Positions 18,042-36,492 of a stretch of 64,000 nucleotides of DNA are shown piece by piece; the stretch's first letter is position 1, and each line of letters starts with the position of its first letter. The DNA lies in the IMG/VR virus record IMGVR_UViG_3300032331_003609, positions 62,001 through 126,000 of that record. One strand, 5' to 3'. The notes below the pieces were generated by a model, which did not search any database, was not told where the DNA came from, and worked only from the letters and a program-made list of their open reading frames with translations. Both the position numbers and the translations under genes were made by a program.

Positions 18042-18466
18042 GGGTCCGTCTGGCTTTGATCCGGATGCGAATGGTAATACTACACGCAGAGGTATGGTAC
18101 TCATCCTCTTTAATCTCGGTACAAACCAATAAACGACAACACAATAGCTCGTCAAGAAATCGGTGCATCAATTATCAACATGGCGTTTGCGAACGCTCCT
18201 GTTGCTTTAGCAGCGTAATTCTTCCCCTGGTGACTTGGGTGGAACAGTAAGTCATAAACCGGTATAGCAATATGCCAAACAGTTTTATCCTTTTTTACAA
18301 AATGGATTGGTGGTTAACGTACTTAAATCGTACGGCCCTTACTGATCAGCTTAAAACGTAGATCAAAAAATACGGAGCAGAATTAAAAACTCAGTTCTAA
18401 GCGTGTGAGACGTTAGTGTTATGATTACTTTCGGAGACAGGGGTTCGAATCCCCTCGGATCCACCA
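18042..18466 (+). ncRNA. ssrA: tmRNA with 27-aa tag DNTIARQEIGASIINMAFANAPVALAA
   Basis: 5' GGGTCCG pairs with 3' CGGATCC-ACCA; T-arm GGGGTTCGAATCCCC; tag ORF 18135..18218 after AATAAAC, ending ALAA-TAA. Confidence 0.92.
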
Positions 18467-18472
18467 TTATAT

Positions 18473-18547
18473 CGTAGGGTAGAGCAGTGGTAGCTCGACG
18501 GGCTCATAACCCGTAGGTCGGAGGTTCGAATCCTTCCCCTGCAACCA
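18473..18547 (+). tRNA. tRNA-fMet (CAT), initiator
   Basis: C1:A72 mismatch, GGG/CCC anticodon stem, encoded CCA. Confidence 0.92.
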
Positions 18548-25459: not shown

Positions 25460-27067
25460 ATGGCAGCAACTACAACAACAATAACATTTGATTTTACAAA
25501 AACCAACCCGTTAAAAAGATGGCAGTTTAATCCAAATGGTGCAACATCTTATTTGTTTAGTGATACCACAATTAGCGGGCCAACGGCTCAAACAGTTGCT
25601 GATGGAAGTCTTTTTAAAATATCCAGATCCGACGATCAATATAACGGATTAACAGAGGGAACCGGAGCATCTATTTCTCTTGATGCGTCCATGAATGAGC
25701 TATTGGGTATATCAAGTACTAATACCTTTGTTAAACGTCTAATAATAGTTCCGCATTTTAAAGTGTTTAATAACTGGTCAGGCATGAACACATCAGCTTT
25801 ACAGACTATAGGAGAAGCGGGTAGATGGATTAATACAAACCAGCCCCTGTCAGTAATGTTTAAATCTAAGATCCGATTTATAAACAGATCTGATGGCTAT
25901 TATATGCAAGCCTGGCCTGCTAATGCTGGTGGATTTAATATTAGTAATACTGGTTGGGCTAATTTTGATACTGATATTAATCTTCTTTCTGTTGGATATG
26001 ACACAGTTGAATCCTATGCAGCAAATACTGAGGCATTAGATTATGTTGGAAATTCTGCTTCAAATGCTATCTTCATAGATGATTTTAACAACTATAGATA
26101 TACCTCAGATACTAGAATATTTAATACCGGAAAAATTAGTAACAGTGTAACTTCCAGTAGTGTTGCAACTCAGTATAAGGTTTTAAATTTTTCCCCAAAT
26201 AATTTTGATACTGCAACTCTTGAAGCAAGTAGCGATTTTGGTGAATATTGGGCATATCCTCTATTGACAACAGATAAAGTTAGATTTGAAATACCATTTG
26301 CTATAACAATTCCTCAATTCCAACACGTTTGGACAGATTGGCCATGGAATAAATCGAGAAAAACCCTAACCACCGATTTAGTATTTACAAAGATTGAATT
26401 CAAAGTGATGTATGATACGATATCAGAATATAAAGCTAAATTTTATGCACCAGTAGATCCAATATTTTCAGCTAATGTCGCTCCAGGTCAGGTGTGGCTA
26501 GATCCAGAAAAAACAATTCTTGTTCCTGCTGGATATTTGGCAAGAAGTGGAAAATACGCTCTTGTAAATGAATTCGGTGTAGCTAATGGATTAAGAAATT
26601 GCCAAGCTAAAATTATTCTTACCGCCTCTGATAACGGAACAGTATCATCATCATATCCAACAGCAGTAAGTGGTTATGGGGATTACAATTTTAATCCTGA
26701 TGTTTCTTATATCACATTAGATGCAGCTCCTAATTATCCGATAGTTTTTGACAGCTGGGAAGCTACAGATTTTGATGGTAATGTTACAACATTAAGCTAT
26801 GATTCAACAATTAATGTTTATAATGGACTTTACGCAAGTATAAAACCAATATTCACAGAGAGCACTCCTGGTCCAAGCCCAAGCCCAACTCCTGGACCAA
26901 CTCCTGGTGGATCCTGTAATCAATATATGACAACGTACGCAGGAACATACACATATACGAATTGTTATGGTAGTTCACAAACATCATATGTCGGAAGTGG
27001 TCAAGAAATATGCGCACAAGCTGCACCAGGTGTTCCTGCAGGTGGAGGATTCTGTCCGCAACCTTAA
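25460..27067 (+). CDS. Putative virion protein with Pro/Thr linker and small Cys-rich C-terminal domain
   Basis: TPGPSPSPTPGPTPGG linker then C..YTYTNC..C..C. Confidence 0.5.
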   Translation: MAATTTTITFDFTKTNPLKRWQFNPNGATSYLFSDTTISGPTAQTVADGSLFKISRSDDQYNGLTEGTGASISLDASMNELLGISSTNTFVKRLIIVPHFKVFNNWSGMNTSALQTIGEAGRWINTNQPLSVMFKSKIRFINRSDGYYMQAWPANAGGFNISNTGWANFDTDINLLSVGYDTVESYAANTEALDYVGNSASNAIFIDDFNNYRYTSDTRIFNTGKISNSVTSSSVATQYKVLNFSPNNFDTATLEASSDFGEYWAYPLLTTDKVRFEIPFAITIPQFQHVWTDWPWNKSRKTLTTDLVFTKIEFKVMYDTISEYKAKFYAPVDPIFSANVAPGQVWLDPEKTILVPAGYLARSGKYALVNEFGVANGLRNCQAKIILTASDNGTVSSSYPTAVSGYGDYNFNPDVSYITLDAAPNYPIVFDSWEATDFDGNVTTLSYDSTINVYNGLYASIKPIFTESTPGPSPSPTPGPTPGGSCNQYMTTYAGTYTYTNCYGSSQTSYVGSGQEICAQAAPGVPAGGGFCPQP

Positions 27068-27085
27068 TGATATATAAAATCAATT

Positions 27086-27307
27086 ATGAAAACATACTTT
27101 AATAAAGATTCATCTTTTTTCTGTCTAGACGACATAGAGCAATCGTACACACAGATAAATGTATTTGGTGATGAAAATGTTATAGTTAAAGGAACTAAAA
27201 CCCAAATCTTTGAGTATTTAATGAGCATAGCATCAGATTCTACAGAATCATCGGCAGGAGAATTTCTTCAGAAAAAATTAGATGCTTTAAATAATATTGG
27301 TCTTTAA
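27086..27307 (+). CDS. Hypothetical protein
   Basis: ORF preceded by GATATATA motif at 27069. Confidence 0.6.
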   Translation: MKTYFNKDSSFFCLDDIEQSYTQINVFGDENVIVKGTKTQIFEYLMSIASDSTESSAGEFLQKKLDALNNIGL

Positions 27308-27332
27308 TTCTCTCTTTATCGTAACTTTTTCT

Positions 27333-27370
27333 TATATTTGGATATAATTTAAATAGGGAAACGATATATA
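27333..27370 (+). promoter_or_regulatory. Promoter region of tRNA operon 1: TATATTTG (Bacteroidota -7 type) and GATATATA motif
   Basis: TATATTTG 27333-27340, GATATATA 27363-27370. Confidence 0.55.
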
Positions 27371-27377
27371 AATTAAA

Positions 27378-27470
27378 ATGAACAAAAGCTTCTACATATT
27401 GCCGCTTCACACTACGTCATCATCTTCATCAAGAAGACCGATAACTCATGTGGAGATACTGGGTAATTAG
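27378..27470 (+). CDS. Leader peptide 1 MNKSFYILPLHTTSSSSSRRPITHVEILGN (putative attenuator)
   Basis: 30-codon ORF between promoter motif and terminator; below ORF-track cutoff. Confidence 0.75.
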   Translation: MNKSFYILPLHTTSSSSSRRPITHVEILGN

Positions 27471-27495
27471 AAGAAACTTAAACTCATTTTCGTCT

Positions 27496-27533
27496 AAAAA
27501 GCCTAGATCCCTAATAAGATTTAGGCTTTTTTT
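27496..27533 (+). terminator. Intrinsic terminator/attenuator upstream of tRNA operon 1
   Basis: GCCTAGATC-loop-GATTTAGGC 9-bp stem plus T7. Confidence 0.85.
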
Positions 27534-27568
27534 ATTGGGTTCTTTGACATGGTGGGAAATTAAAAATT

Positions 27569-27656
27569 GGAGAGATGGCAGAGTTGGTCGATTGCGTCAG
27601 TCTTGAAAACTGAAGAACGGGAAACTGTTCCGTGGGTTCGAATCCTACTCTCTCCG
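27569..27656 (+). tRNA. tRNA-Ser (TGA)
   Basis: GGAGAGA/TCTCTCC, long variable arm, TTCGAAT, G73. Confidence 0.95.
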
Positions 27657-27699
27657 CAGGCGCAATTTCGTACCTTATACAGATATAGGGTATGAATAA

Positions 27700-27771
27700 G
27701 CATCTTAAGCATTGCAGGCGATGCGCCAGATTTGTAATCTGGATAACTCGGTTCGATTCCGGGCGGATGCT
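27700..27771 (+). tRNA. tRNA-Thr (TGT), atypical D-loop
   Basis: CCAGA-TTTGTAA-TCTGG anticodon arm, TTCGATT T-loop, GCATCT/GGATGC acceptor. Confidence 0.75.
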
Positions 27772-27864
27772 CAATACTAACGTAAAATAAGTACACTAAC
27801 ATAATATCTGTTAGAATACAAAAGTTCGGTAGCAAGGTTATTAACGCGTTTTATAAAGATATAG

Positions 27865-27985
27865 GCCGGTGTGGCGGAATGAATAATCTTGAATTCGAAT
27901 AGAGATTATTAGACGTCCCGTAATTCTAGAAAAGGTGGTGTATCCGAAATGGACATCGTGAAGGTAGTCAACCCTTCCACCGGCA
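27865..27985 (+). pseudogene. tRNA-Leu-like element with 30-nt D-loop hairpin insertion and no clear anticodon arm
   Basis: GCCGGTG/CACCGGC-A acceptor, TGGCGGAAT..AGACG, variable arm, GAAGG/CCTTC T-stem. Confidence 0.55.
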
Positions 27986-28094
27986 CCTTATTTAAGATAT
28001 TCTAAGAACAGCGTCGAGCCGGATTTTGCGTCGGTCTTAGATTAGATTTGTCCAATGGGAGAGCCGGCCGCGACCCCGGACAAATCACTATATT

Positions 28095-28168
28095 GGTTCT
28101 GTAGCTCAGTTGGATAGAGCGCCACCCTTCTAAGGTGGATGTCATTGGTTCGAATCCAATCGGGATCA
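28095..28168 (+). tRNA. tRNA-Arg (TCT)
   Basis: Canonical cloverleaf, CCACC-CTTCTAA-GGTGG. Confidence 0.93.
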
Positions 28169-28173
28169 CAATT

Positions 28174-28308
28174 AAGGTTGATTGGGGAATGGTTATGTCT
28201 ATAGCTCGAGCGTGGATACTGGCTGGCATAATCGGAGTTTGGAGGTATTCACCTAAGTAATGCCAATCGTAAAAGAGATCGTCCACTGAACCATCTTTCT
28301 CTTTCCTT
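28174..28308 (+). ncRNA. Candidate structured ncRNA inside the tRNA operon
   Basis: Nested helices AAGG/CCTT, ATGGTT/AACCAT, GTGGA/TCCAC, TGGCAT/ATGCCA, AGGT/ACCT. Confidence 0.5.
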
Positions 28309-28315
28309 AAAATAT

Positions 28316-28390
28316 GTTGGATGTAGCCTAATGGTAGGGCAAATGCTTGTGGCGCATTACGCGTGGGTTCGATCCCCATCATTCAACCCA
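28316..28390 (+). tRNA. tRNA-His (GTG)
   Basis: G-1:C73 8-bp acceptor, AATGC-TTGTGGC-GCATT, CCA. Confidence 0.93.
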
Positions 28391-28394
28391 ATAT

Positions 28395-28470
28395 CTAGAT
28401 GTAGAGGAGCCAAGTTTATCTCGCTGCTTTTGGAAAGCAGAGCACGCTGGGGCGGAGCCAGCCATTTAGA
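28395..28470 (+). tRNA. tRNA-Pro (TGG) with non-canonical D- and T-loops
   Basis: C1:G72, A73; CTGCT-TTTGGAA-AGCAG; T-arm GCTGG-GGCGGAG-CCAGC. Confidence 0.7.
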
Positions 28471-28538
28471 CAAAAAGATCAAAGAGACCGCTAAATCGAG
28501 TTAGTGAAAATCTACATTCTCTTTGGTCTTTTATATTA

Positions 28539-28612
28539 GGACTTGTAACTCAGTTGGTTAGAGTGCAACACTCATAATGTTGAAGCCCCTGGTTCGAGCC
28601 CAGGCTGGTCCA
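28539..28612 (+). tRNA. tRNA CAT, probably Ile2 (lysidine-modified, reads ATA); elongator Met not excluded
   Basis: Canonical cloverleaf CAACA-CTCATAA-TGTTG; G1:C72. Confidence 0.85.
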
Positions 28613-28698
28613 CGAAATAGTGTCTTGGTACGCTCTGAAGAAATTCAACGACAAGGTCTCGGTAAGCGAAACGCGTTCGATCTTGCCCAAAATATAAA

Positions 28699-28780
28699 GG
28701 CCCCCTGTTGTAATTGGTAGCCAATTCAGATTTAGGATCTGATGTCGCAAGACGTGTCGGTTCGAGTCCGACGGGGGTCA
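28699..28780 (+). tRNA. tRNA-Leu (TAG)
   Basis: TCAGA-TTTAGGA-TCTGA, variable arm TGTC-GCAA-GACG, TTCGAGT. Confidence 0.92.
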
Positions 28781-28852
28781 CAACAAGATTAGGTACAAAA
28801 AGATATTAAGAAACTAAACCTAAAAACGATATATAATATTCAACTAAACAAA

Positions 28853-28936
28853 ATGAGAAACCAGAATCAATATAATTATTACCCAATGCCTGAACAAGGT
28901 AATGAGGGAAATTATATGGACACAGATCTGGGATAA
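28853..28936 (+). CDS. Leader peptide 2 MRNQNQYNYYPMPEQGNEGNYMDTDLG (putative attenuator)
   Basis: 27-codon ORF after GATATATA (28828-28835) and before terminator. Confidence 0.75.
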   Translation: MRNQNQYNYYPMPEQGNEGNYMDTDLG

Positions 28937-28956
28937 CATTTTTTAAATATATTTTG

Positions 28957-28989
28957 AAAACCCAGATCTCAATAAGGTCTGGGTTTTTT
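28957..28989 (+). terminator. Intrinsic terminator/attenuator upstream of tRNA operon 2
   Basis: CCCAGATC-TCAATAA-GGTCTGGG stem plus T6. Confidence 0.85.
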
Positions 28990-28993
28990 ATTT

Positions 28994-29066
28994 GGGGATG
29001 TAGCTCCAGCGGTAGAGCGCGTGACTGTTAATCACTAGGTCGTAAGTTCGAATCTTACCATCCCCT
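28994..29066 (+). tRNA. tRNA-Asn (GTT)
   Basis: GGGGATG/CATCCCC, CTGTTAA loop, TTCGAAT. Confidence 0.93.
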
Positions 29067-29071
29067 CAGAT

Positions 29072-29145
29072 TGCAAGATAGTTCATTTGGTGAGAACACT
29101 GGATTCATAACCCAGAGGTGATGAGTTCGAATCTCATTCTTGCGA
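29072..29145 (+). tRNA. tRNA-Met (CAT), probably elongator
   Basis: TGCAAGA/TCTTGCG, TTCATAA loop, TTCGAAT. Confidence 0.85.
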
Positions 29146-29150
29146 CAAAT

Positions 29151-29222
29151 GCTCCCGTCGACTAGCGGTTAGGTCACCTCCCTTTCACGGAGGTAGCACG
29201 GATTCGAATTCCGTCGGGAGTA
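29151..29222 (+). tRNA. tRNA-Glu (TTC)
   Basis: CCTCC-CTTTCAC-GGAGG. Confidence 0.92.
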
Positions 29223-29227
29223 CAAAT

Positions 29228-29308
29228 TGGGATATCGCATAGTGGCAATTGCGGCTGACTGTAAATCAGCTCTCTTTGAGTTCGGCGGTTCGAGTCCGTC
29301 TATCCCAA
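29228..29308 (+). tRNA. tRNA-Tyr (GTA)
   Basis: GCTGA-CTGTAAA-TCAGC, long variable arm, TTCGAGT. Confidence 0.93.
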
Positions 29309-29314
29309 CAATAC

Positions 29315-29439
29315 GAGTTAACTGTCCAGTGAGGGAACTGGGGCCTGCCGGTAAATCAGGCGTCGCAAGATCAAGGTTAGTAAGTGATTCTGATACCTGC
29401 AGTACAACAGATCACGTGGTTCGAATCCCCCTTAACTCA
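29315..29439 (+). ncRNA. Enlarged tRNA-like element, anticodon ambiguous
   Basis: GAGTTAA/TTAACTC acceptor, GGTTCGAATCC T-loop, extra hairpins. Confidence 0.5.
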
Positions 29440-29502
29440 CTAAATCAGAAGCGGTAAAAAAGCGTGATATATAGGATAAATTAATCACGAATATAGCAAT
29501 CA

Positions 29503-29673
29503 ATGAAAATTGCTGACATTAAAACACATTTAAAAGGGAAAGGCCAGTATAAAGCCGAAATGATTCTAAGCGAAAAATTTGAGGGAGAAAATGTTTTTAC
29601 GAATGACAATGTCTCTATTCAACCCCAAAAATGGTTGTTATACACTATCACTTTAAAGGAGGATATTAAATAA
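29503..29673 (+). CDS. Hypothetical protein (56 aa, MKIADIKTHLKG...)
   Basis: Hand-found ORF after GATATATA at 29466. Confidence 0.55.
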   Translation: MKIADIKTHLKGKGQYKAEMILSEKFEGENVFTNDNVSIQPQKWLLYTITLKEDIK

Positions 29674-29712
29674 CTAATCAACTGAATTAATCTATATTCA
29701 TTTTATGCTCAT

Positions 29713-30879
29713 ATGAAAATTGATTTTTGGTATAGCAATATTATTCCAAAATCCGGAATTCAGGATCTACTTGAAGAAATAGACGAGGATGTTTTATTTA
29801 AGAATATTGATACTGATACAGTAAATACTAATAAATTAAATTTTTTAGTCTTTACGTGGGAAACAAAATGGGCATTTTCCAACACCTACTATACACATTC
29901 CGACGAGTTTATAAGATTACTATCAAGACTTCAGGATAAAGATTTTTATTTTATAGCAGATTTTTCTGGAGAAGCTCACACACGTCCTGACGAAAATAGT
30001 TTATTGTTCCTAAATAAATTAAGGGATAATAAGATCAATATAAATCGGATAATTGTTGCAAACAATGATTCTTCCAAAATAGGAATTAATAAAATAAGAT
30101 ATGAATCATTTATACTTAACACGTGCTTTTTTCCTAATTTCTTTTTGTCAACATGTAATCATCTGGATAATATCCTAGGTAACCAGCAAATAAAAAATTC
30201 TATAATACCTGATAAAAAATTCTTATGTCTCAATCGTAGAATGTTCCATCATAAGTACAAAGTTATAGAGGAATTATTCCATAGAGGATTATTAGAAGAT
30301 ACTAGATTTAGCTGGGTAGATAATAAGGATAAAAAAAATCTATTCAATAAAAATCTGAACTCATATTTAGGGATAGACATAAATAATTTTAAATCAATTC
30401 AATTAGAAGGTGATGTAATGTATGGTAGCGATTTATCAAGACATGAAGAATATCTTTATACTGTAAATCCTGATTGGTATTATAAGAGTAAAGTTAATAT
30501 TATCACTGAAACAATATTGGAGGGAAAAGAAATTCACATAACAGAAAAAACGTGGAAGGCAATTTATTTAGGAATTCCTTTTGTGATTTATGCATCAAAG
30601 AATCATCTTAAGATCCTAAGAGAAATGGGGTTTAAGACATTTAACACATTGATCAACGAAGATTATGATGAAATGATTGGAGATGCTAAACTAAAACAGA
30701 TTATAGATAGTGCTGAAGAATTAGCTAGAATTTATAATACCCCAGAAGTTTTAGAGATATGCAGATTTAATCAGAAAATTTATTCAGATAAAATACATCG
30801 TAAGAATATTTGTAAAAATTCTTTTTTGAATAGGATAGTTGATATTAAAAATAATACTATTAAATTAAAGATCTTTTAA
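29713..30879 (+). CDS. Single-domain paralogue of the 1770..4265 repeat (GT10-like ET..TEK motif)
   Basis: KFLCLNRR, SKVNIITET..IHITEKTWKAI..GIPFVI. Confidence 0.55.
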   Translation: MKIDFWYSNIIPKSGIQDLLEEIDEDVLFKNIDTDTVNTNKLNFLVFTWETKWAFSNTYYTHSDEFIRLLSRLQDKDFYFIADFSGEAHTRPDENSLLFLNKLRDNKININRIIVANNDSSKIGINKIRYESFILNTCFFPNFFLSTCNHLDNILGNQQIKNSIIPDKKFLCLNRRMFHHKYKVIEELFHRGLLEDTRFSWVDNKDKKNLFNKNLNSYLGIDINNFKSIQLEGDVMYGSDLSRHEEYLYTVNPDWYYKSKVNIITETILEGKEIHITEKTWKAIYLGIPFVIYASKNHLKILREMGFKTFNTLINEDYDEMIGDAKLKQIIDSAEELARIYNTPEVLEICRFNQKIYSDKIHRKNICKNSFLNRIVDIKNNTIKLKIF

Positions 30880-31489
30880 CTATAGGTTTGGTGTATCTAG
30901 TTTTGAAAATTTCAGCCAATTCGCTGTGTCCAACCTCACCATAATGTCCATCATCAACTTCACCTTCAGATTCTTCTGAAACTGTTAGGCATCTTATAAA
31001 TTCACATTTTGTTATAGCTCCTCCAAAAGGTGTCCAATGAATTATGTCATTATTAGGAAGAGCCTTGTTTATTAATCTTATCCAAGAATCCACTTCGTGT
31101 GCAAATTTATACGAAGATCTATTTAACATTATTTCGTCTATTGATTGCTTAGATAAATGATTGAAAAGAGAAAGATCATAATCATCACCAGGTCTTAGAC
31201 TAACCCATGTATCGTTTTTTGTCGTTAGTCTAAATCTAACTGGATTTGACCATCCGATTATAACAAAGTCATTTTCTTTTATTTCCCAGATATTTTTACA
31301 GATGTTTTCGAAAATAGCATAATTATCAGAGCCTCCTTCCCCTATATTCTTTTTAATGAAACTAAGATCCCTAGATAGAATATCAGAAAAGTTAAGAGGT
31401 TTATAACCCTTCCATTCTATGTATTTTTTTGCCCAGTGTCCAAATCCCTCTGTGTATGAGTCACCAAATGTCCAAAGTGTGTTCGCCAT
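30860..31489 (-). CDS. SGNH/GDSL hydrolase-like protein
   Basis: LWTFGDSYT, GSDN, DGHY; start moved to MANTLW. Confidence 0.7.
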   Translation of the reverse strand: MANTLWTFGDSYTEGFGHWAKKYIEWKGYKPLNFSDILSRDLSFIKKNIGEGGSDNYAIFENICKNIWEIKENDFVIIGWSNPVRFRLTTKNDTWVSLRPGDDYDLSLFNHLSKQSIDEIMLNRSSYKFAHEVDSWIRLINKALPNNDIIHWTPFGGAITKCEFIRCLTVSEESEGEVDDGHYGEVGHSELAEIFKTRYTKPIVKRSLI

Positions 31490-31558
31490 GTTGATAATAT
31501 ATACTATAGAAGTTAAAACTAAAATATTCCAACTATCATATATAAAATAAAACCCCGC

Positions 31559-32335
31559 ATGTTTAAATATCTTACAAGGGAGGAAGTTCAACAGCTTTCT
31601 TTCGATTGGAAATATAAAGGATACTCCGTAATAGATCTAATCACATCAGAAGAGGCTGATTTAATATCAGAAGATCTTGATAATCTAAGAAAAAGAAGAA
31701 ATTCAGTAGATGATAAGTACGGGGAGTATGATCCTTATATCCATCCTCACAAAGAATCAGAGATGGTTGAAAAAATTCTTGTACACCCTAAGATAGTGGA
31801 AGCCATGGAATTTATAATAAATTCTGAGATTCAAGGAATACAAACGTGGGCTTATTTTAAACCTCCGGGTGAACTTGGTAGAGACGCACACCAAGATGCT
31901 TTCTATGCTCAAACCCAATGGAATAAGACTGCTAATGTTAGTATATCTCTGGACGATACTGATGAGTCAAATGGAGGTATTTGGTTTTATGAGGCTTCTC
32001 ATTTACTTCCAATTCTACCTATAGGGATAGACGAGGAAAGAGCTAAGCTTAATCCTATTAGATGGAGAAACGAGAGAGGTAAGGCATGTGTTATGCCTGA
32101 AGGACATAATTTTACTAGAATAACCCCATCGATCAGAAAGGGACAAGCAGTTTTCCTGCATTCACATATAGTTCATGGATCTAATGAGAATAAAAGCGAT
32201 CGTTTCAGAAGATCTATTCTGAGCGGATATACAGGCAAAGGATCTCCATTCAGAAGCGGAGAACATATGAAAAGGGAACCAATTGACATTTATGAACTAA
32301 AATTAAAATACTGGGAGGTAAAAAAACTCCAATAG
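31559..32335 (+). CDS. Phytanoyl-CoA dioxygenase (PhyH)-like 2OG-Fe(II) oxygenase
   Basis: AHQD, LDD.DESNGG, HSHIVHGS..N.S..FRR. Confidence 0.85.
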   Translation: MFKYLTREEVQQLSFDWKYKGYSVIDLITSEEADLISEDLDNLRKRRNSVDDKYGEYDPYIHPHKESEMVEKILVHPKIVEAMEFIINSEIQGIQTWAYFKPPGELGRDAHQDAFYAQTQWNKTANVSISLDDTDESNGGIWFYEASHLLPILPIGIDEERAKLNPIRWRNERGKACVMPEGHNFTRITPSIRKGQAVFLHSHIVHGSNENKSDRFRRSILSGYTGKGSPFRSGEHMKREPIDIYELKLKYWEVKKLQ

Positions 32336-32342
32336 ATTTTGA

Positions 32343-33554
32343 ATGAAGCTAATACACACATTTGTTCCGAATAAGTTTGATCTAAAAAACGAGAAGGATA
32401 AAAACATAATCTGGAAGGATTTAATGTATGTCCAGATGCTTAGTGTTTTGCTTGCTAATAGGGAATATGGAGGTATTTCATTGTACACCAACAACACAAT
32501 AAAAAAACAAATATTAGATATAGGTGTTCCCTATTCTGACATAGACACTGACATATTACAAGACACCACATCAGATCTATTTTGTATACCTAAACTCAGG
32601 ATTTATAGAGAAATAAAAGAACCTTTTGTACATATTGATACAGATACTCTTATCTATAATAAGATAGATTTTTCAAAATTTGATTCGTCCGTAGTTTATT
32701 CACATTCGGATATTAGACCTCCGTTACATAAAAATGGCGACGATAAACTCTATGAGATCTTTAATAATTATCCATCCCTAGGAGATTCAGATTCGTTCTT
32801 TAAATCTGCTAAAATAACATACCTAGATCTGTTTAATAGATTGAATAATGATCATTCAGAATTTAAATTAAACAACATAAGGGTAGGTGATATACCTAAT
32901 ATGAATATTATAATTGTTAATGACCATGACAATTTTAATAAGGCATCTCAAATGTCCCTGGATCATTATATAAGAAATAAGGAAGTTATAGACAGCACTA
33001 AAAATGGGGAATGTTACATAGAGCAGCTAATGATACACCTGAATATGATGGAGATTAGCGAAAAGTATAGGGAAGAAGTTATAGCAAAAAAGACCTTCAT
33101 TCTTAAAGATTCACCATTTATGCTAGATGCTGATTTTGGGTCTCATTTAGATGATTTAAAATTTCCATTCACCATGATACACAATTCTCATAAAGATGTA
33201 GAAATAGATGAAACAATTCATATTAATGGAGTATTATATTCAAGGGCTCAAGAATATCACGAGCATTACGGTAGAACGACTAAGGTAAATTCGATGGAAG
33301 ACATTATAAAATTATTTGATTTTGATTTTTATGGTCTTTCCCACCTAACATTCTATAAATGGTCTGAATTTTTTCAAGCAATTGTAATAGGATATATTGT
33401 AAAAAACTTCGGAGAAGAATATGTTAGAAGTGTTTACGAATATTATAAAACAATTTATCCTGTAGTTTATAGTTTTCCTAGATTATCAAAAGGAGAAACA
33501 TTATACCAGGATCTAACAGGATTTAAATTTGAAAAGATAAAAAGCTTGGTCTGA
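32343..33554 (+). CDS. Hypothetical protein, glycosyltransferase-like (DxD)
   Basis: PKL.IY...EPFVHIDTD. Confidence 0.5.
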   Translation: MKLIHTFVPNKFDLKNEKDKNIIWKDLMYVQMLSVLLANREYGGISLYTNNTIKKQILDIGVPYSDIDTDILQDTTSDLFCIPKLRIYREIKEPFVHIDTDTLIYNKIDFSKFDSSVVYSHSDIRPPLHKNGDDKLYEIFNNYPSLGDSDSFFKSAKITYLDLFNRLNNDHSEFKLNNIRVGDIPNMNIIIVNDHDNFNKASQMSLDHYIRNKEVIDSTKNGECYIEQLMIHLNMMEISEKYREEVIAKKTFILKDSPFMLDADFGSHLDDLKFPFTMIHNSHKDVEIDETIHINGVLYSRAQEYHEHYGRTTKVNSMEDIIKLFDFDFYGLSHLTFYKWSEFFQAIVIGYIVKNFGEEYVRSVYEYYKTIYPVVYSFPRLSKGETLYQDLTGFKFEKIKSLV

Positions 33555-33562
33555 ACAAAAAA

Positions 33563-33635
33563 GCGGGAGTAGCTCATTTGGTAGAGCGATAGCCTTCCAA
33601 GCTATAGGTGGCCAGTTCGAGCCTGGTCTCCCGCT
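33563..33635 (+). tRNA. tRNA-Gly (TCC)
   Basis: GCGGGAG/CTCCCGC, U73, ATAGC-CTTCCAA-GCTAT. Confidence 0.95.
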
Positions 33636-33698
33636 CCGCCCTAAACCAGAATATGTCTAATAAACTATTCTGGTTTATTATTATAAAATAGGTTTAGC

Positions 33699-34244
33699 GT
33701 GGATATAGATCAATACTTACAAACAGAAAATTGGTTTGATTATCATTCTTTTTATGATTTTGTATCAGAAAAGAATTATAAAAAACTTGTAGAGGTTGGG
33801 GTCTGGAAAGGGCATTCAGTATCCTATCTGGCTGCTAAGAATATGAATAGTAAAATATATGCGGTGGATCTTTTTGAGTTATCGAGGGAATTGTTTCATG
33901 GGGAAATACAAAAACAGATCCCTTACATATATGACATCTACAATAAGAATCTTGAATTAACTGGAACAAGAAAGACAATTAGGGATATAAAGGGTCTATC
34001 GTGGGATGTTGCAAATCACTTTCAGGATCAGACGGTTGATTTTGTTTTTCTTGATGCTTCTCATAATTATGAGAGTGTTACAAAAGATATTAATGCATGG
34101 TTTCCTAAAGTTAGATCAGGAGGTATAATAGCAGGACATGACTATAGTTGGGATGGTGTTAATTTTGCAGTAAAAGAATTTGCAGGAGAAGAATTGGAAA
34201 TACTGACTTACGAAGGAAGTGTTTGGTATATAAATAAAATATAA
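33699..34244 (+). CDS. Class I SAM methyltransferase (Methyltransf_24-like)
   Basis: VEVGVWKG, DFVFLDASHNY, GGIIAGHDY. Confidence 0.88.
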   Translation: MDIDQYLQTENWFDYHSFYDFVSEKNYKKLVEVGVWKGHSVSYLAAKNMNSKIYAVDLFELSRELFHGEIQKQIPYIYDIYNKNLELTGTRKTIRDIKGLSWDVANHFQDQTVDFVFLDASHNYESVTKDINAWFPKVRSGGIIAGHDYSWDGVNFAVKEFAGEELEILTYEGSVWYINKI

Positions 34245-34249
34245 AAGAT

Positions 34250-34480
34250 ATGATTTGGATTATTTACATTTTAAGCGTGGGGTATTGCTTATACAAGTTA
34301 GCAAAAAGACATCAAAAAAATGATCTAGGTGGAGGTATTGGTACATCTCCTGGATTGGATACTATTATGGTAGTCGTATTGGCTCCTTTGTTGACCGTAG
34401 TGGACGTATCGTTAACATGGATCAGAATATATAAGGAAGCTGAAGAAGCAAGGCGTAGGAGAACTAATACAATGCTTTAA
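34250..34480 (+). CDS. Small membrane protein, hypothetical
   Basis: Two hydrophobic segments. Confidence 0.6.
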   Translation: MIWIIYILSVGYCLYKLAKRHQKNDLGGGIGTSPGLDTIMVVVLAPLLTVVDVSLTWIRIYKEAEEARRRRTNTML

Positions 34481-34493
34481 TAATTAAATACAC

Positions 34494-34654
34494 TGGCCGG
34501 TGATGAAAAGCGTACGCACGGCAGACATACCCTCCTGTCTCGGGGGCGCGGATAACAAGACAGATAAATGGTAATGGGTTGACCACACGCTTGCAAGCAT
34601 AAGTGCCATTTATTGAATTGCCGCATGGAGGTTCGAATCCTTCCTGGCCAGCCA
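34494..34654 (+). tRNA. tRNA-Asp (GTC) with very large variable-region insertion
   Basis: TGGCCGG/CTGGCCA, G73, CCA; CCCTC-CTGTCTC-GGGGG; GGAGG-TTCGAAT-CCTTC. Confidence 0.75.
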
Positions 34655-34680
34655 CTAGAAATATTCTGGATAAATTTGAA

Positions 34681-35673
34681 ATGAAAGAAATAATAATCGT
34701 AGGATCTTATTGTAATACTGAAAAAAAACTTCTCTGCCTAATTGATCTGATTGCTAAGGCCAAAGAAAATAATATGGACATATTGGTCTATGGAAGATAT
34801 CCTATTCCCGAATACGTCCAATCCATGTGCGACTATTGGATTTATGACAAATCCAATCCAGTATTTAAAACAGATAGAAAAAATTTCATTTGGTATAAAA
34901 ATTTTGGTAAAAAAATAATTAGAACTGTAGAGAATGACTGGGGATTTGCAGCAATAGAGCAAATTATAAAATCTCTAGGAGTAGTTAAAGCTTTCAGCTA
35001 TGAAATTGCTTACTGGGTTAACTATGATGTTGATCTAACTAATTTTCAAAAATTTAAATCTTTATGCTCTGAAAATTTTAAATCACATAGCTGTGTAATG
35101 TATCCCTGGTCAAATAATGGAATAGGGGTTTGTCTAACATCAATAGGATTTAAAATTAATGAATCATATGCTAGATTAAAAGGGGTTATAACAAAAACAA
35201 ACTATATCTCAATTTTTAAAAGTGACAATTTTATTCCGGAAGATATTTTTAGAAAGATGGTAGAAAGCTCTGAATTGGATTATTTTATATCAGAAGAGTA
35301 TACACCGATGAGGGCTTCAATTAACTCTGAAGGTGAAAGATTAAATGGAGAAATTCCCGAAGAGTTTAAGAAAACAAAATCGTATTTTGGGAGATGCTTT
35401 ATAGGAACAAGCAGAAATAGCGGTTCTAAGGTAGTTTACATGTCATCGGTTAGAGAGGAAATAAAAGAAATAGTTTTAAATTTTGGTAGTGATGATATCA
35501 CATTTTATGATTTGCAACTGGACAAGTACGGAGCAACTGAAATAAAAATTCCAGATGTCTTCCCCAAGAAGCTTTTGATCAAATCTATCAATGGGAATTC
35601 TATTGATGAATTATTGGACGATAAACTAGACGATGATTATTTTAGACTTAATGAGATAGAAAATATAATATAA
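34681..35673 (+). CDS. Hypothetical protein, GT-like
   Basis: Start moved to MKEII (track start lies inside the tRNA); YWVNYDVD. Confidence 0.55.
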   Translation: MKEIIIVGSYCNTEKKLLCLIDLIAKAKENNMDILVYGRYPIPEYVQSMCDYWIYDKSNPVFKTDRKNFIWYKNFGKKIIRTVENDWGFAAIEQIIKSLGVVKAFSYEIAYWVNYDVDLTNFQKFKSLCSENFKSHSCVMYPWSNNGIGVCLTSIGFKINESYARLKGVITKTNYISIFKSDNFIPEDIFRKMVESSELDYFISEEYTPMRASINSEGERLNGEIPEEFKKTKSYFGRCFIGTSRNSGSKVVYMSSVREEIKEIVLNFGSDDITFYDLQLDKYGATEIKIPDVFPKKLLIKSINGNSIDELLDDKLDDDYFRLNEIENII

Positions 35674-35726
35674 GAATAAAGTATGATTTGGATTATTTAC
35701 ATCGTAAGTGTGAAATAATAAGAATT

Positions 35727-35761
35727 AAAAAAAAACCCAGATCTTTTAGGTCTGGGTTTTA
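35727..35761. terminator. Bidirectional intrinsic terminator between convergent genes
   Basis: A-run, CCCAGATC-TTTTA-GGTCTGGG, T-run. Confidence 0.8.
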
Positions 35762-35781
35762 TTTTGAGAAAAATTTTATAT

Positions 35782-36492
35782 TTATGGGTAAGCATTATAT
35801 CCTTGGGCAAATTCGGTTAACTCACCAAAAATGTTTATTCTACATGTGTAGAATGAACCACCTCCTTGTGGTGAAATCCTGTAAAAATTACTTGAATTAC
35901 TATCACCCACAAAGTAAAGACCAGATGGTTTGCTATTAGTTACATCTTGTTGAGTGTATAAATATTGGTACTGGTTTATTTCATATCCTCCTTCTTGATA
36001 AACTGTTGTTCCTGGAGAAGAATCATTAGCAGCATCAGATCTTGTGCTGTACATAGTAGAGACACTAAGCATTCTTACCGGATCTGCTTCTCCGAATGAT
36101 GAATAAAATCCATTACCTCTTAGCCAGAAATCTGCATCATATCCAGTTGTAAACACATTCGGCTTAAATATTGGAATTTTATTTGCAAGTTCTACAAATG
36201 ATGCTTCGGTTTTTTCGTCCGATTTAAAAAATCTAAGTCTAGGCGAACCTGATACTACACCAGTTCCTCCTCCTGTTGGTCTTGATGTCGTTGAATACGT
36301 AGTAGAGGTTTCTCCTATAATGACATATCCGAACATATCAGATTTTGCTCCTCCTGTCCATTCTCCTACTGAATAGTTGACTGTTCCGGATTCTGCTGTT
36401 TGGTTGCCAGCAACTACAACATTGCCAAATATCTGACATCCTGCTATAGGATAAGAGTCTGCTCCTATATGTTTTGCATCAAATCTTTTCAT
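35782..36492 (-). CDS. Hypothetical, putative virion protein
   Basis: Gly/Ser/Thr-rich; GATATATA upstream on minus strand (36516-36523). Confidence 0.55.
   Translation of the reverse strand: MKRFDAKHIGADSYPIAGCQIFGNVVVAGNQTAESGTVNYSVGEWTGGAKSDMFGYVIIGETSTTYSTTSRPTGGGTGVVSGSPRLRFFKSDEKTEASFVELANKIPIFKPNVFTTGYDADFWLRGNGFYSSFGEADPVRMLSVSTMYSTRSDAANDSSPGTTVYQEGGYEINQYQYLYTQQDVTNSKPSGLYFVGDSNSSNFYRISPQGGGSFYTCRINIFGELTEFAQGYNAYP

What the first reader, a model, noticed from the sequence alone, without database searches (positions are those of the whole stretch)
27453..35761. The attenuator hairpins form a homologous sequence family, with a third copy
Terminator 1 (GCCTAGATC-CCTAATAA-GATTTAGGC), terminator 2 (CCCAGATC-TCAATAA-GGTCTGGG) and the hairpin at 35736-35756 (CCCAGATC-TTTTA-GGTCTGGG) share the stem sequence. 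The first two also share an AATAA loop, and both leaders end in GAT(A)CTGGG encoding L-G. This suggests a duplicated regulatory cassette whose leader codons were re-tuned, or a hairpin bound by a phage antitermination factor. The third copy has only an 11-codon ORF upstream and no tRNAs downstream.
Basis: partly seen in the sequence, partly recalled or inferred. Interest (0 to 1): 0.6.

Follow-up and report, generated by a model that had tools for sequence, protein, structure and literature searches.

The report
Paralogous attenuators before phage tRNA arrays
Two of the three look-alike hairpins are the terminators of duplicated leader-peptide switches that appear to let a large freshwater phage transcribe its own tRNA genes only when those tRNAs run short; the third is an ordinary two-way terminator.

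Summary
T1 and T2 belong to two paralogous cassettes. Each has a phage promoter-like motif (GATATATAA), a 27-30 codon leader ORF, a terminator and then a tRNA array.

Leader 1 is rich in Ser, Thr, Arg, His, Pro and Leu codons, matching array 1. Leader 2 is rich in Asn, Tyr, Glu and Met codons, matching array 2. The cross-comparisons show no enrichment.

I found 24 distinct cassettes in related freshwater phage contigs.
- All 24 keep the terminator and the antiterminator pairing, with compensatory changes in cassette 1.
- Leader codons track gain and loss of tRNA-Cys, tRNA-Lys and tRNA-Leu(UAA).
- A more distant phage group has the same design with unrelated stems, so the stem sequence reflects paralogy and is not a required signal.
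- Loops are not conserved, which argues against a protein-bound hairpin.

H3 matches in the hairpin only. It is a conserved bidirectional terminator between convergent genes, and its 11-codon ORF is a truncated gene duplicate. There is no expression evidence, and I found no precedent in the literature searched.

The parts
27360..27371 (+). Promoter-like 12-mer AACGATATATAA of cassette 1 (core GATATATAA), 7 nt before the leader ATG
   Evidence: Identical 12-mer at 28825. GATATATAA occurs 27 times in the genome, and 15 copies lie within 60 nt upstream of the ATG of an ORF of 80 aa or more. Conserved in relatives.
27378..27470 (+). Leader ORF 1 (P0001): 30 codons plus stop. Codons 8-21 are an unbroken run of Leu/Pro/His/Thr/Ser/Arg codons.
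   Evidence: 12-19 of 29 codons are cognate to array-1 tRNAs (p from 1e-3 to 2e-5), with no enrichment for array 2. Length and frame are kept in 13 distinct versions; variable sites by codon position are 7/8/18; the stop varies TAA/TAG.
27398..27412 (+). Candidate region 1 (leader codons 7-11), predicted to pair with the leader end as an anti-antiterminator
   Evidence: MFE fold and consensus fold of 11 cassette-1 sequences (one pair reads GU:5 GC:3 AU:3). No double compensatory change, so this is inferred only.
27454..27463 (+). Region 2 of cassette 1 (GATACTGGGT, leader codons 26-29): the antiterminator strand, complementary to the T1 5' arm with one bulge
   Evidence: Duplex -9.4 kcal/mol against a mean of about -3.4 for random genome windows. 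92% of cells are paired across 11 cassette-1 sequences, and one pair switches AU to GC together with the terminator arm.
27496..27533 (+). Terminator T1: A5, stem 27501-27509 / 27518-27526, loop CCTAATAA, T7
   Evidence: -16.3 kcal/mol. 100% paired in 19 sequences, with two compensatory pairs.
27569..28781 (+). tRNA array 1: Ser-UGA, Thr-UGU, Arg-UCU, His-GUG, Pro-UGG, CAU tRNA, Leu-UAG, with unassigned conserved spacers
   Evidence: ARAGORN; Rfam tRNA.
28825..28836 (+). Promoter-like 12-mer of cassette 2, 17 nt before the leader ATG
   Evidence: conserved as GATATATAA in L020, L122 and L024.
28853..28936 (+). Leader ORF 2 (P0002): 27 codons plus stop, rich in Asn, Tyr, Glu, Met, Gln and Asp
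   Evidence: 13 of 26 codons are cognate to array 2 (background 0.19, p = 4e-4), with no enrichment for array 1. Nine distinct versions exist in relatives.
28923..28931 (+). Region 2 of cassette 2 (AGATCTGGG): a perfect complement of the T2 5' arm that ends 2 nt before the stop codon TAA
   Evidence: exact reverse complement. The MFE of 28840-28995 forms this antiterminator rather than the terminator. Duplex -13.9 kcal/mol; 0.03% of random windows do as well.
28957..28989 (+). Terminator T2: A4, stem 28961-28968 / 28976-28983 (one G.U pair), loop TCAATAA, T6. tRNA-Asn starts 5 nt after the T-run.
   Evidence: -17.2 kcal/mol. The stem is invariant in 8 cassette-2 sequences.
28994..29309 (+). 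tRNA array 2: Asn-GUU, CAU tRNA, Glu-UUC, Tyr-GUA
   Evidence: Relatives add Cys, Lys, Gln and Asp.
35727..35765 (.). H3: a bidirectional intrinsic terminator (A9, stem 35736-35743 / 35749-35756, loop TTTTA, T-rich tail) between convergent ORFs 34603-35673 (+) and 35782-36492 (-)
   Evidence: -18.2 kcal/mol on the + strand, -14.1 on the - strand. The model scores the hairpin part only. Identical over 32-33 nt in L178, L213, L226 and L256, whose flanks are 77-81% identical.
35663..35719 (+). Truncated duplicate of the 5' end of ORF 34250-34480. It contains the '11-codon ORF' (35684-35719). The repeat 35663-35712 matches 34228-34279.
   Evidence: Local alignment of about 52 nt, with 20 identical bases from the ATG on; the same repeat is seen in L121.

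Best explanation
T1 and T2 are the terminators of two paralogous ribosome-mediated transcription attenuators that gate the phage's two tRNA arrays. H3 is an ordinary conserved bidirectional terminator that shares only the hairpin.

Each cassette has four parts: a phage promoter-like motif GATATATAA, a short leader ORF, a terminator, and then the tRNA genes. In cassette 2 the first tRNA starts 5 nt after the T-run, so array 2 can only be transcribed by reading through T2.

The last codons of each leader are complementary to the 5' arm of the terminator.
- If the ribosome runs to the stop codon, it covers that segment, the terminator folds and transcription stops.
- If the ribosome stalls earlier, the segment is free and pairs with the 5' arm. 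This is the antiterminator, and RNA polymerase runs into the tRNA genes.
- The stalling codons are the ones read by the tRNAs encoded downstream.

The result would be negative feedback on the supply of exactly those tRNAs.

Shown here: the hairpins, the leader ORFs, the complementarity, the codon bias, and conservation and covariation in relatives. Inferred: translation of the leaders, ribosome stalling and regulated read-through.

The shared stem sequence reflects duplication of the cassette plus a three-way constraint on the stem: coding leader end, 5' arm and 3' arm. It is not a sequence-specific signal.
For: 1. Anatomy. A promoter-like 12-mer is shared by both cassettes, and its core is a genome-wide motif before gene starts. 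Leader ORFs. Hairpins with T-runs.

2. Antiterminator.
- GATCTGGG at the leader-2 end is the exact complement of the T2 5' arm, and it wins the MFE fold.
- In all 24 distinct cassettes the last 24 nt of the leader pair with the 5' arm at -7.5 to -14.7 kcal/mol, against about -3 for random windows (fraction of random windows as good: 0-0.037).
- In the 22 cassettes of types 1 and 2 this pairing ends 2-6 nt before the end of the stop codon; in the two type-3 cassettes it ends 15 nt before.

3. Covariation.
- The terminator is 100% paired in 19 sequences, with two pairs changed on both sides.
- The cassette-1 antiterminator is 92% paired. One pair reads AU:5 GC:5 GU:1 and switches together with the terminator's own partner.

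4. Codons.
- Leader 1 against array 1: 12-19 of 29, p from 1e-3 to 2e-5. Leader 2 against array 2: 13 of 26, p = 4e-4.
- Cross-controls are not significant. The reciprocal Fisher test gives p = 0.001.

5. Relatives.
- The leader has a Cys codon if and only if tRNA-Cys heads the array (4 against 4 sequences, at least two independent events).
- Lys codons number 2-3 with tRNA-Lys and 0-1 without.
- TTA/TTG codons number 2-3 with Leu-UAA and 1 without.

6. Generality. L194 and L211 carry further cassettes with unrelated stems and the same logic.
- Phe-Ile-Val-Ala-Asn-Asp-Tyr-Trp-Lys array: 24 of 35 leader codons match.
- Ser-His-Leu-Arg-Gln-Met-Thr array: 24-27 of 28 match, p from 4e-9 to 2e-10.
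- Each leader matches its own array best.

7. Coding signature. Frame and length are kept. Variable sites by codon position are 7/8/18 in cassette 1.

8. Shine-Dalgarno. Its absence is normal here: 6 of 236 ORFs have one.

9. H3. Hairpin-only model score, no significant antiterminator, convergent-gene context and orthologous conservation.
Against: - There is no expression, 3'-end or ribosome data. RNA-library contigs covered only tRNA-like parts.
- Host and polymerase are unknown. If the GATATATAA promoters are read by a phage polymerase that ignores intrinsic terminators, the model fails.
- Several tRNAs do not co-vary with leader codons: Met, Asp, Ser-GCU, Ser-GGA.
- The window's leader 2 keeps Gln and Asp codons although no tRNA-Gln or tRNA-Asp was found in its array.
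- The covariation events are few and the sequences are related. Stems of cassette 2 are invariant, so they neither support nor oppose pairing.
- Cassette 3 (Pro-Arg-Cys) is weak: 5 of 29 codons, p = 0.08, and its pairing lies further from the stop.
- No anti-antiterminator was found in cassette 2, so naked RNA would read through by default.
- The identity of T2 and H3 could be chance or convergence in a GATC-rich genome.
Confidence: 0.75

Rival explanations
1. All three are plain intrinsic terminators that mark transcription-unit ends. The short ORFs upstream are fortuitous and untranslated, and the stem similarity is chance or convergence in an AT-rich, GATC-rich genome.
For: - The same stem with A and T flanks occurs at about 60 unrelated, mostly palindromic terminator sites with no tRNA and in a large unrelated phage family.
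- GATC and AGATCT are over-represented.
- H3 is such a terminator.
- There are no expression data.
Against: - tRNA-Asn begins 5 nt after the T2 T-run, which leaves no room for a promoter.
- Leader frame, length and stop are kept in 22 distinct cassette-1 and cassette-2 versions, with third-position bias in cassette 1.
- The codon enrichment is reciprocal.
- The leader-end complementarity is present in every cassette.
- Leader codons follow tRNA gain and loss.
Confidence: 0.08
2. The conserved stem is a recognition site for a phage protein: an antitermination factor of the boxB or put kind, or a processing nuclease that releases the pre-tRNA. This would explain why the same stem recurs at three places.
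For: - The stem ACCCAGATC / GGTCTGGGT is invariant in all cassette-2 copies.
- H3 is identical over 32-33 nt in relatives whose flanks are only 77-81% identical. That is more conservation than a terminator needs.
- Loops are A-rich on the 3' side in all copies.
Against: - Loop sequences and lengths differ freely.
- The stem changes by compensatory substitutions in cassette 1.
- Cassettes in L194 and L211 use unrelated stems with the same architecture.
- In the attenuators, stem invariance is explained by the triple constraint of coding leader end, 5' arm and 3' arm.
- No candidate factor was identified.
Confidence: 0.07
3. The leader ORFs encode functional micro-proteins. The hairpins are simply their terminators, and the tRNA arrays are transcribed by constitutive partial read-through.
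For: - The peptide sequence is well conserved in cassette 1: ten codons vary only synonymously.
- The promoter-to-ATG layout is like that of ordinary phage genes.
Against: - It does not explain why leader composition mirrors the downstream tRNA set in four different cassette types.
- It does not explain why the replacements are swaps among array amino acids.
- It does not explain why the ORF end always mimics the terminator's 3' arm.
- The peptides have no fold-like or membrane-like composition.
Confidence: 0.05
4. H3 is a true third member by descent: a copy of the T2-type terminator duplicated without its leader, or kept alike by gene conversion. It would not be an independent terminator that happens to match.
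For: - Both arms are identical over 10 + 10 nt, including the same G.U position.
- This is the only identical stem pair among about 20 terminator-like hairpins in the 245-kb genome.
- H3 is the best non-cassette hit of the model, 35-39 bits against 28 or less for other terminators.
- Both hairpins sit at boundaries of inserted modules.
Against: - There is no similarity outside the hairpin and its A and T runs.
- The same stem arises in unrelated genomes.
- The sequence is too short for any test of descent.
- This reading concerns origin only and is compatible with the main explanation.
Confidence: 0.4

Closest known systems
Leader-peptide (ribosome-mediated) transcription attenuators of amino-acid operons, especially the multivalent thr (Thr + Ile codons) and ilvGMEDA (Leu, Val, Ile codons) leaders of enterobacteria
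   Same: Short leader ORF with clustered regulatory codons, an intrinsic terminator, and an alternative antiterminator that uses the terminator's 5' arm and the leader's 3' end. Ribosome position decides which structure forms. Several amino acids are sensed by one leader. Cassette 1 even has a candidate 1:2 helix.
   Different: The regulated genes are tRNA genes, not biosynthetic enzymes, so the sensed molecule is the operon's own product. Each leader covers six to nine amino acids. The elements are phage-borne and duplicated. They are not members of any Rfam leader family: the best match is a sub-threshold Thr_leader hit of 23 bits against a gathering score of 55.
T-box riboswitches
   Same: They also couple tRNA charging status to read-through of a terminator by way of an antiterminator.
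   Different: T-boxes bind uncharged tRNA directly and need no ORF. No T-box or specifier structure was found. Here a translated leader is the sensor, and tRNA genes are the target rather than synthetase or biosynthesis genes.
Ordinary bidirectional intrinsic terminators between convergent genes
   Same: H3 has a GC-containing stem flanked by an A-run and a T-run, lies between convergent ORFs and folds on both strands.
   Different: H3 is unusually conserved in sequence and shares its stem with T2. T1 and T2 differ in having a leader, an antiterminator and tRNAs directly downstream.
Phage tRNA clusters such as that of T4 (recalled from general knowledge, not tested here)
   Same: A clustered set of phage tRNA genes transcribed as polycistronic precursors.
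   Different: As far as I recall, no leader-peptide control has been described for them, and six full-text searches found none. I have a vague, unverified memory of attenuator-like features reported upstream of an E. coli tRNA-Phe gene in the 1980s. I could not confirm it.

Membership tests
Ribosome-mediated leader-peptide attenuators | Short translatable leader ORF between the promoter and the regulated genes | tested here: met
   ORFs 27378-27470 and 28853-28936. The frame is kept in 22 distinct versions. The promoter-like motif lies 7 and 17 nt upstream. Translation itself is not shown.
Ribosome-mediated leader-peptide attenuators | Regulatory codons enriched for what is sensed | tested here: met
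   own-array enrichment at p from 1e-3 to 2e-5 (leader 1) and 4e-4 (leader 2), with cross-controls not significant. Cassette type 5 in L211 reaches 24-27 of 28 codons.
Ribosome-mediated leader-peptide attenuators | Intrinsic terminator directly upstream of the regulated genes | tested here: met
   T1 and T2 have stems of 9 and 8 bp plus A-U extension and T6-7. They are 100% paired with compensatory changes.
Ribosome-mediated leader-peptide attenuators | Mutually exclusive antiterminator involving the leader's 3' end, placed so that a terminating ribosome masks it | tested here: met
   In cassettes 1 and 2 the pairing segment ends 2-6 nt before the end of the stop codon.
Ribosome-mediated leader-peptide attenuators | Anti-antiterminator (1:2) helix | tested here: inconclusive
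   Predicted for cassette 1 with one-sided changes only. Not found for cassette 2.
Ribosome-mediated leader-peptide attenuators | Read-through responds to charged-tRNA supply through ribosome stalling | not testable with these tools
   Needs reporter, Term-seq or Ribo-seq experiments. Public RNA runs were uninformative.
Curated Rfam leader families (Thr_leader, His_leader, Leu_leader, Trp_leader and others) | Score at or above the family's gathering threshold | tested here: not met
   No match at gathering. The best match is Thr_leader at 23.2 bits against 55, E = 0.19, at 28864-28992.
Intrinsic (Rho-independent) terminators | GC-containing hairpin followed by a U-tract | tested here: met
   All three hairpins. 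H3 also has this on the minus strand, with T9.
Protein-dependent antitermination hairpins (boxB- or put-like) | Conserved loop or sequence recognised by the factor | tested here: not met
   Loops vary in sequence and length among orthologues, and unrelated stems are used in L194 and L211.
T-box riboswitch | Specifier loop and T-box motif (Rfam RF00230) | tested here: not met
   No match even with E-value up to 1 over 27300-29500.
Dispersed repeated palindromes (REP- or MITE-like) | Many dispersed copies in the genome | tested here: not met
   There are two exact copies and one diverged copy in 244,850 bp.

The most novel reading that the evidence does not exclude
Phage tRNA arrays are under product feedback. 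Modular leader-peptide attenuators read the supply of exactly the tRNAs encoded behind them. They duplicate with the arrays and are re-tuned codon by codon as tRNA genes are gained or lost. At least five cassette types were seen in two groups of freshwater phages. Such a switch would turn phage tRNA genes on when the host pool does not serve phage codons, or when host defences deplete or cleave particular tRNAs, and off again once supply is restored.
Probability: 0.6. Interest if true: 0.9.

Novelty: new variant of a known kind. Interest (0 to 1): 0.8.

Why it matters
Why phages carry tRNA genes, and how those genes are controlled, is an open question. The current ideas are codon-usage compensation and escape from tRNA-targeting host defences.

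A leader-peptide switch in front of tRNA arrays would be, to my knowledge, the first case in which classical attenuation regulates the tRNAs themselves. It would make tRNA supply a sensed and homeostatically controlled quantity during infection.

The comparative series found here is a natural experiment on how a sensor is re-tuned: paralogous cassettes, codon changes that follow tRNA gain and loss, and the same design on unrelated stems. It also gives compact parts (about 170 nt) that can be tested directly in reporter assays.

For annotation, it shows that short ORFs followed by a terminator upstream of tRNA arrays should not be dismissed as noise.

Tried and rejected
- The built-in terminator scan missed all three hairpins, because it extends the stem into the A and T runs and then finds too few T. 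I used my own scan instead.
- Megablast of 26000-36000 against GenBank phages found no match. A tail-fibre protein search gave only domain-level hits to cyanophages and pelagiphages.
- A bare-stem scan of IMG/VR gave more than 118 contigs, mostly unrelated and without T tails. It was useful only after filtering for downstream tRNAs.
- Rfam found no family for the cassettes, for the tRNA-like RNA at 34494-34654, or for the unassigned spacers. ARAGORN with introns gave only a low-confidence call at 34494-34654.
- I tried to type the CAU tRNAs as Ile2 or Met by comparison with annotated E. coli tRNAs. 28539-28613 hit both tRNA-Ile and tRNA-Met, and 29072-29146 hit nothing. This is unresolved.
- Public runs: the stretch occurs in freshwater metagenomes. 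RNA-library contigs overlapped only tRNA-like parts, mostly with unlike flanks, so they say nothing on transcription, starts or ends.
- The antiterminator test for H3 gave -8.2 kcal/mol on the + strand, with 7% of random windows as good, and nothing on the - strand. I rejected it.
- The shared AATAA loop as a signal: rejected, because the loops differ in relatives.
- Six literature searches found no description of leader-peptide control of phage tRNA arrays. The one paper I opened was irrelevant.
I repeated the step by reference to stored loci.
- I did not use the large protein searches, structure prediction or complex prediction, because no protein claim needed them.

Full report
SETTING. The window is bases 62001-126000 of a 244,850-bp IMG/VR virus record, 34% G+C, estimated 86% complete. 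It encodes a tail sheath, a DnaB-like helicase, an SbcC-like protein, radical-SAM proteins and a collagen-repeat tail fibre, so it is a large myovirus. The DNA occurs in freshwater metagenomes. The window holds a tmRNA and 13 tRNA genes. Only 6 of 236 ORFs of 100 aa or more have a Shine-Dalgarno-like motif, which is below the 8.7% seen at random positions. Missing ribosome-binding sites therefore mean nothing here.

THE OBSERVATION. All three hairpins are exactly as described.
- T1 is 27501-27526, T2 is 28961-28983 and H3 is 35736-35756.
- The exact T2/H3 motif occurs twice in the window and in the whole genome, and never in shuffles.
- My own scan finds about 20 terminator-like hairpins in the genome. 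T2 and H3 are the only pair with identical arms.
- T1 and T2 stems are only moderately alike, and GATC and AGATCT are over-represented genome-wide. Stem similarity alone would not establish homology.

T1 AND T2 BELONG TO PARALOGOUS CASSETTES.
- The same 12-mer AACGATATATAA lies 7 and 17 nt before the two leader ATGs.
- Its core GATATATAA occurs 27 times in the genome, and 15 copies lie within 60 nt upstream of ORF starts. It behaves as a general phage promoter-like element with very short 5' leaders.
- Downstream of the divergent sensor codons, the cassettes align through the leader end, an AT-rich spacer (TTAAA...ATTTT...AAAA), the terminator and the T-run.
- In relatives of the L120, L183 and L228 groups, cassette 1 carries the T2-type stem itself (ACCCAGATC with GGTCTGGGT). 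The window's T1 stem is therefore a variant of the same stem, reached by two compensatory pair changes.

WHAT THE SHARED LEADER END IS. GATCTGGG at 28924-28931 is the exact reverse complement of the T2 5' arm. In the minimum-energy fold of 28840-28995 it pairs with that arm in place of the terminator's own 3' arm, which has one G.U pair. In cassette 1, GATACTGGGT (27454-27463) pairs with GCCTAGATC with one bulged base.

Across the 24 distinct cassettes recovered:
- The last 24 nt of the leader always pair with the terminator's 5' arm, at -7.5 to -14.7 kcal/mol. Random genome windows average about -3, and 0-3.7% of them do as well.
- In the 22 cassettes of types 1 and 2 the paired segment ends 2-6 nt before the end of the stop codon, so a terminating ribosome would cover it. 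In the two type-3 cassettes it ends 15 nt before.

In cassette 1 the position that distinguishes the two stem classes changes in all three strands together. The 5' arm goes T to C, the 3' arm A to G, and the leader end A to G. The window itself is a G.U intermediate. The bulged base is the free third position of an Ile codon (ATA, ATC, ATT). Cassette 1 also has a candidate 1:2 helix between codons 7-11 and the leader end. That helix is supported by one-sided changes only.

LEADER CODONS MATCH THE tRNAs BEHIND THEM.
- Leader 1 (P0001) has an unbroken run of 14 Leu/Pro/His/Thr/Ser/Arg codons (codons 8-21). Array 1 encodes Ser-UGA, Thr-UGU, Arg-UCU, His, Pro-UGG, a CAU tRNA and Leu-UAG.
- Leader 2 (P0002) is rich in Asn, Tyr, Glu and Met. 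Array 2 encodes Asn, a CAU tRNA, Glu and Tyr.
- Against the phage's own codon usage, leader 1 has 12-19 of 29 codons cognate to array 1 (p from 1e-3 to 2e-5).
- Leader 2 has 13 of 26 codons cognate to array 2 (p = 4e-4).
- The two cross-comparisons are not enriched, and the reciprocal Fisher test gives 0.001.

RELATIVES. Two close relatives were found through the upstream gene (L121 and L122). Others came from pattern scans of viral contigs and one scan of metagenome contigs.

The extended-hairpin pattern gave 142 oriented matches, because palindromic sites are counted on both strands. Of these, 27 lie 5-39 nt upstream of a tRNA array and have a leader ORF of about 27-40 codons ending 19-27 nt before the hairpin. 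The remaining matches, about 60 sites, are mostly palindromic bidirectional terminators in unrelated contigs without tRNAs. The stem motif is therefore not specific to attenuators.

Leader codons follow the arrays.
- A Cys codon is present exactly where tRNA-Cys heads array 2. That is four sequences with and four without, on both sides of the deepest splits, so at least two events.
- Lys codons number 2-3 with tRNA-Lys and 0-1 without.
- In cassette 1, TCA TCA is replaced by TTA TTA or TTA TCA exactly where Leu-UAA is present.
- Met, Asp, Ser-GCU and Ser-GGA do not co-vary.
- The window's leader 2 keeps Gln and Asp codons although only relatives have those tRNAs in the array.

Coding signature.
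- Cassette-1 leaders keep 30 codons and an in-frame TAA or TAG in all 13 versions.
- Variable sites by codon position are 7, 8 and 18.
- Most replacements are swaps among array amino acids.

L121 lacks window 28790-30867, which is cassette 2, array 2 and two ORFs. The cassette therefore travels with its array as a module.

THE DESIGN DOES NOT NEED THIS STEM. A more distant group (L194, L211) has three further cassettes behind the same promoter motif.
- One uses GCCCAGATC before Pro-Arg-Cys. It is weak: 5 of 29 codons, p = 0.08.
- One uses an unrelated stem (AACCTCTGAAT) before Phe-Ile-Val-Ala-Asn-Asp-Tyr-Trp-Lys. 24 of 35 leader codons match the set, including the single Trp.
- One uses another unrelated stem before Ser-His-Leu-Arg-Gln-Met-Thr-Leu. 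24-27 of 28 codons match, p from 4e-9 to 2e-10.

In a leader-by-array matrix, four of the five leaders match their own array best. Each has leader-end complementarity to its own terminator arm.

Loops of orthologous hairpins differ in sequence and length. The AATAA loop is not conserved. A loop-reading or stem-reading protein is therefore unnecessary and unlikely.

THE THIRD COPY.
- A covariance model of leader end plus hairpin scores 98.7 and 82.8 bits on the two cassettes. It scores 38.7 and 35.3 bits on H3, on the minus and plus strands. Other terminators score 28 bits or less. The genome therefore has two cassettes, and H3 matches in the hairpin only.
- H3 lies between convergent ORFs (34603-35673 on the plus strand, 35782-36492 on the minus strand), has A9 and T-rich flanks, and folds on both strands.
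- No significant antiterminator precedes it.
- In relatives it follows tRNA-Gly and a 76-aa ORF. It is identical over 32-33 nt where the flanks are 77-81% identical.
- The '11-codon ORF' is the start of that 76-aa ORF, duplicated in a 52-nt repeat (34228-34279 and 35663-35712) that brackets a 1.4-kb insert.
- Thirty nucleotides cannot decide whether H3 shares ancestry with T2. I put that at about 0.4.

MECHANISM PROPOSED. Transcripts start after GATATATAA and the leader is translated at once.
- With ample charged tRNA, the ribosome reaches the stop codon and masks region 2. The terminator forms and RNA polymerase stops before the tRNAs.
- If any of the sensed tRNAs is scarce, the ribosome stalls in codons 8-20 (leader 1) or 3-18 (leader 2). 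Region 2 pairs with the 5' arm and the array is transcribed.
- This is multivalent attenuation as in the thr and ilv leaders, but with the tRNAs themselves as product, so it gives feedback control.

Shown: the anatomy, the complementarity, the codon statistics, and conservation and covariation. Inferred: translation, stalling and regulated read-through.

LIMITS. There are no expression data, because the RNA-library contigs covered only tRNA-like parts. Host and polymerase are unknown. The covariation events are few and phylogenetically linked. The CAU tRNAs could not be typed. No precedent turned up in six full-text searches, but the library lacks most older subscription papers.

Noticed in passing
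window 34494-34654 (+): A conserved RNA of about 160 nt with a tRNA-like acceptor stem and T-arm, an encoded CCA end and a large internal insert. It is 93-97% identical in relatives whose flanks are about 80% identical. It has no Rfam family. ARAGORN calls it only at relaxed threshold, as a 'tRNA-Ser with an 88-nt intron'.
   Followed up: partly
window 27773-28094, 28170-28316 and 29310-29440 (+): Unassigned G+C-richer segments inside and after the tRNA arrays, some with tRNA-like ends. ARAGORN and Rfam find nothing. In relatives, Ser-GGA and Leu-UAA occupy the first gap, and Gln and Asp follow Tyr. The segments may be decayed tRNAs or other small RNAs.
   Followed up: partly
window 28790-30867 against L121 5040-5080: A 2.1-kb presence/absence module. 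The close relative L121 lacks cassette 2, array 2 and the two ORFs 29503-29673 and 29713-30879. Its tRNA-Leu is joined directly to the sequence found at window 30868.
   Followed up: partly
window 34228-34279 and 35663-35712: A 52-nt direct repeat (gene end plus the start of the 76-aa ORF) brackets a 1.4-kb insert holding the tRNA-like RNA and ORF 34683-35673. ORF 35782-36492 (-) is likewise an insert next to H3 that is absent from several relatives. Terminators here mark module boundaries.
   Followed up: partly
whole genome G000, e.g. window 1757, 27069, 27363, 28828, 46125: GATATATAA is a genome-wide promoter-like motif placed 3-30 nt before start codons (27 copies). 50 of 236 ORFs have a similar motif within 45 nt upstream. 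Almost no gene has a Shine-Dalgarno sequence (6 of 236).
   Followed up: partly
G000:C1:1189-1212 (-), outside the window; window 33640-33680: The loop CCTAATAA of T1 recurs exactly in an unrelated terminator at the far end of the genome. CTAATAA also sits in the loop of the hairpin after tRNA-Gly. TAATAA-type loops look enriched, but they are not conserved in relatives.
   Followed up: no
L194 132-340, 2555-2730 and 7043-7196; L211 (reverse strand) 2348-2494: A more distant phage group with more than 20 tRNAs has three further leader-terminator cassettes before tRNA sub-arrays, two of them with unrelated stems. Leader composition matches each sub-array.
   Followed up: yes
window 18042-18547 (+): A phage-encoded tmRNA (80 bits, with a tag peptide ending ALAA) is followed 6 nt later by a CAU tRNA. 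No leader or terminator cassette precedes it.
   Followed up: no
window 28864-28992 (+): A sub-threshold full-length match of cassette 2 to Rfam Thr_leader (23.2 bits, gathering score 55, E = 0.19). It is a resemblance in architecture only and does not show membership.
   Followed up: yes
window 27534-27568 (+): The 35-nt spacer between T1 and tRNA-Ser holds a conserved GGGTTCTTTGAC block, with TTGACA at 27545-27550, in all cassette-1 versions. No -10 element follows at the right distance. It could be a precursor-processing signal.
   Followed up: no
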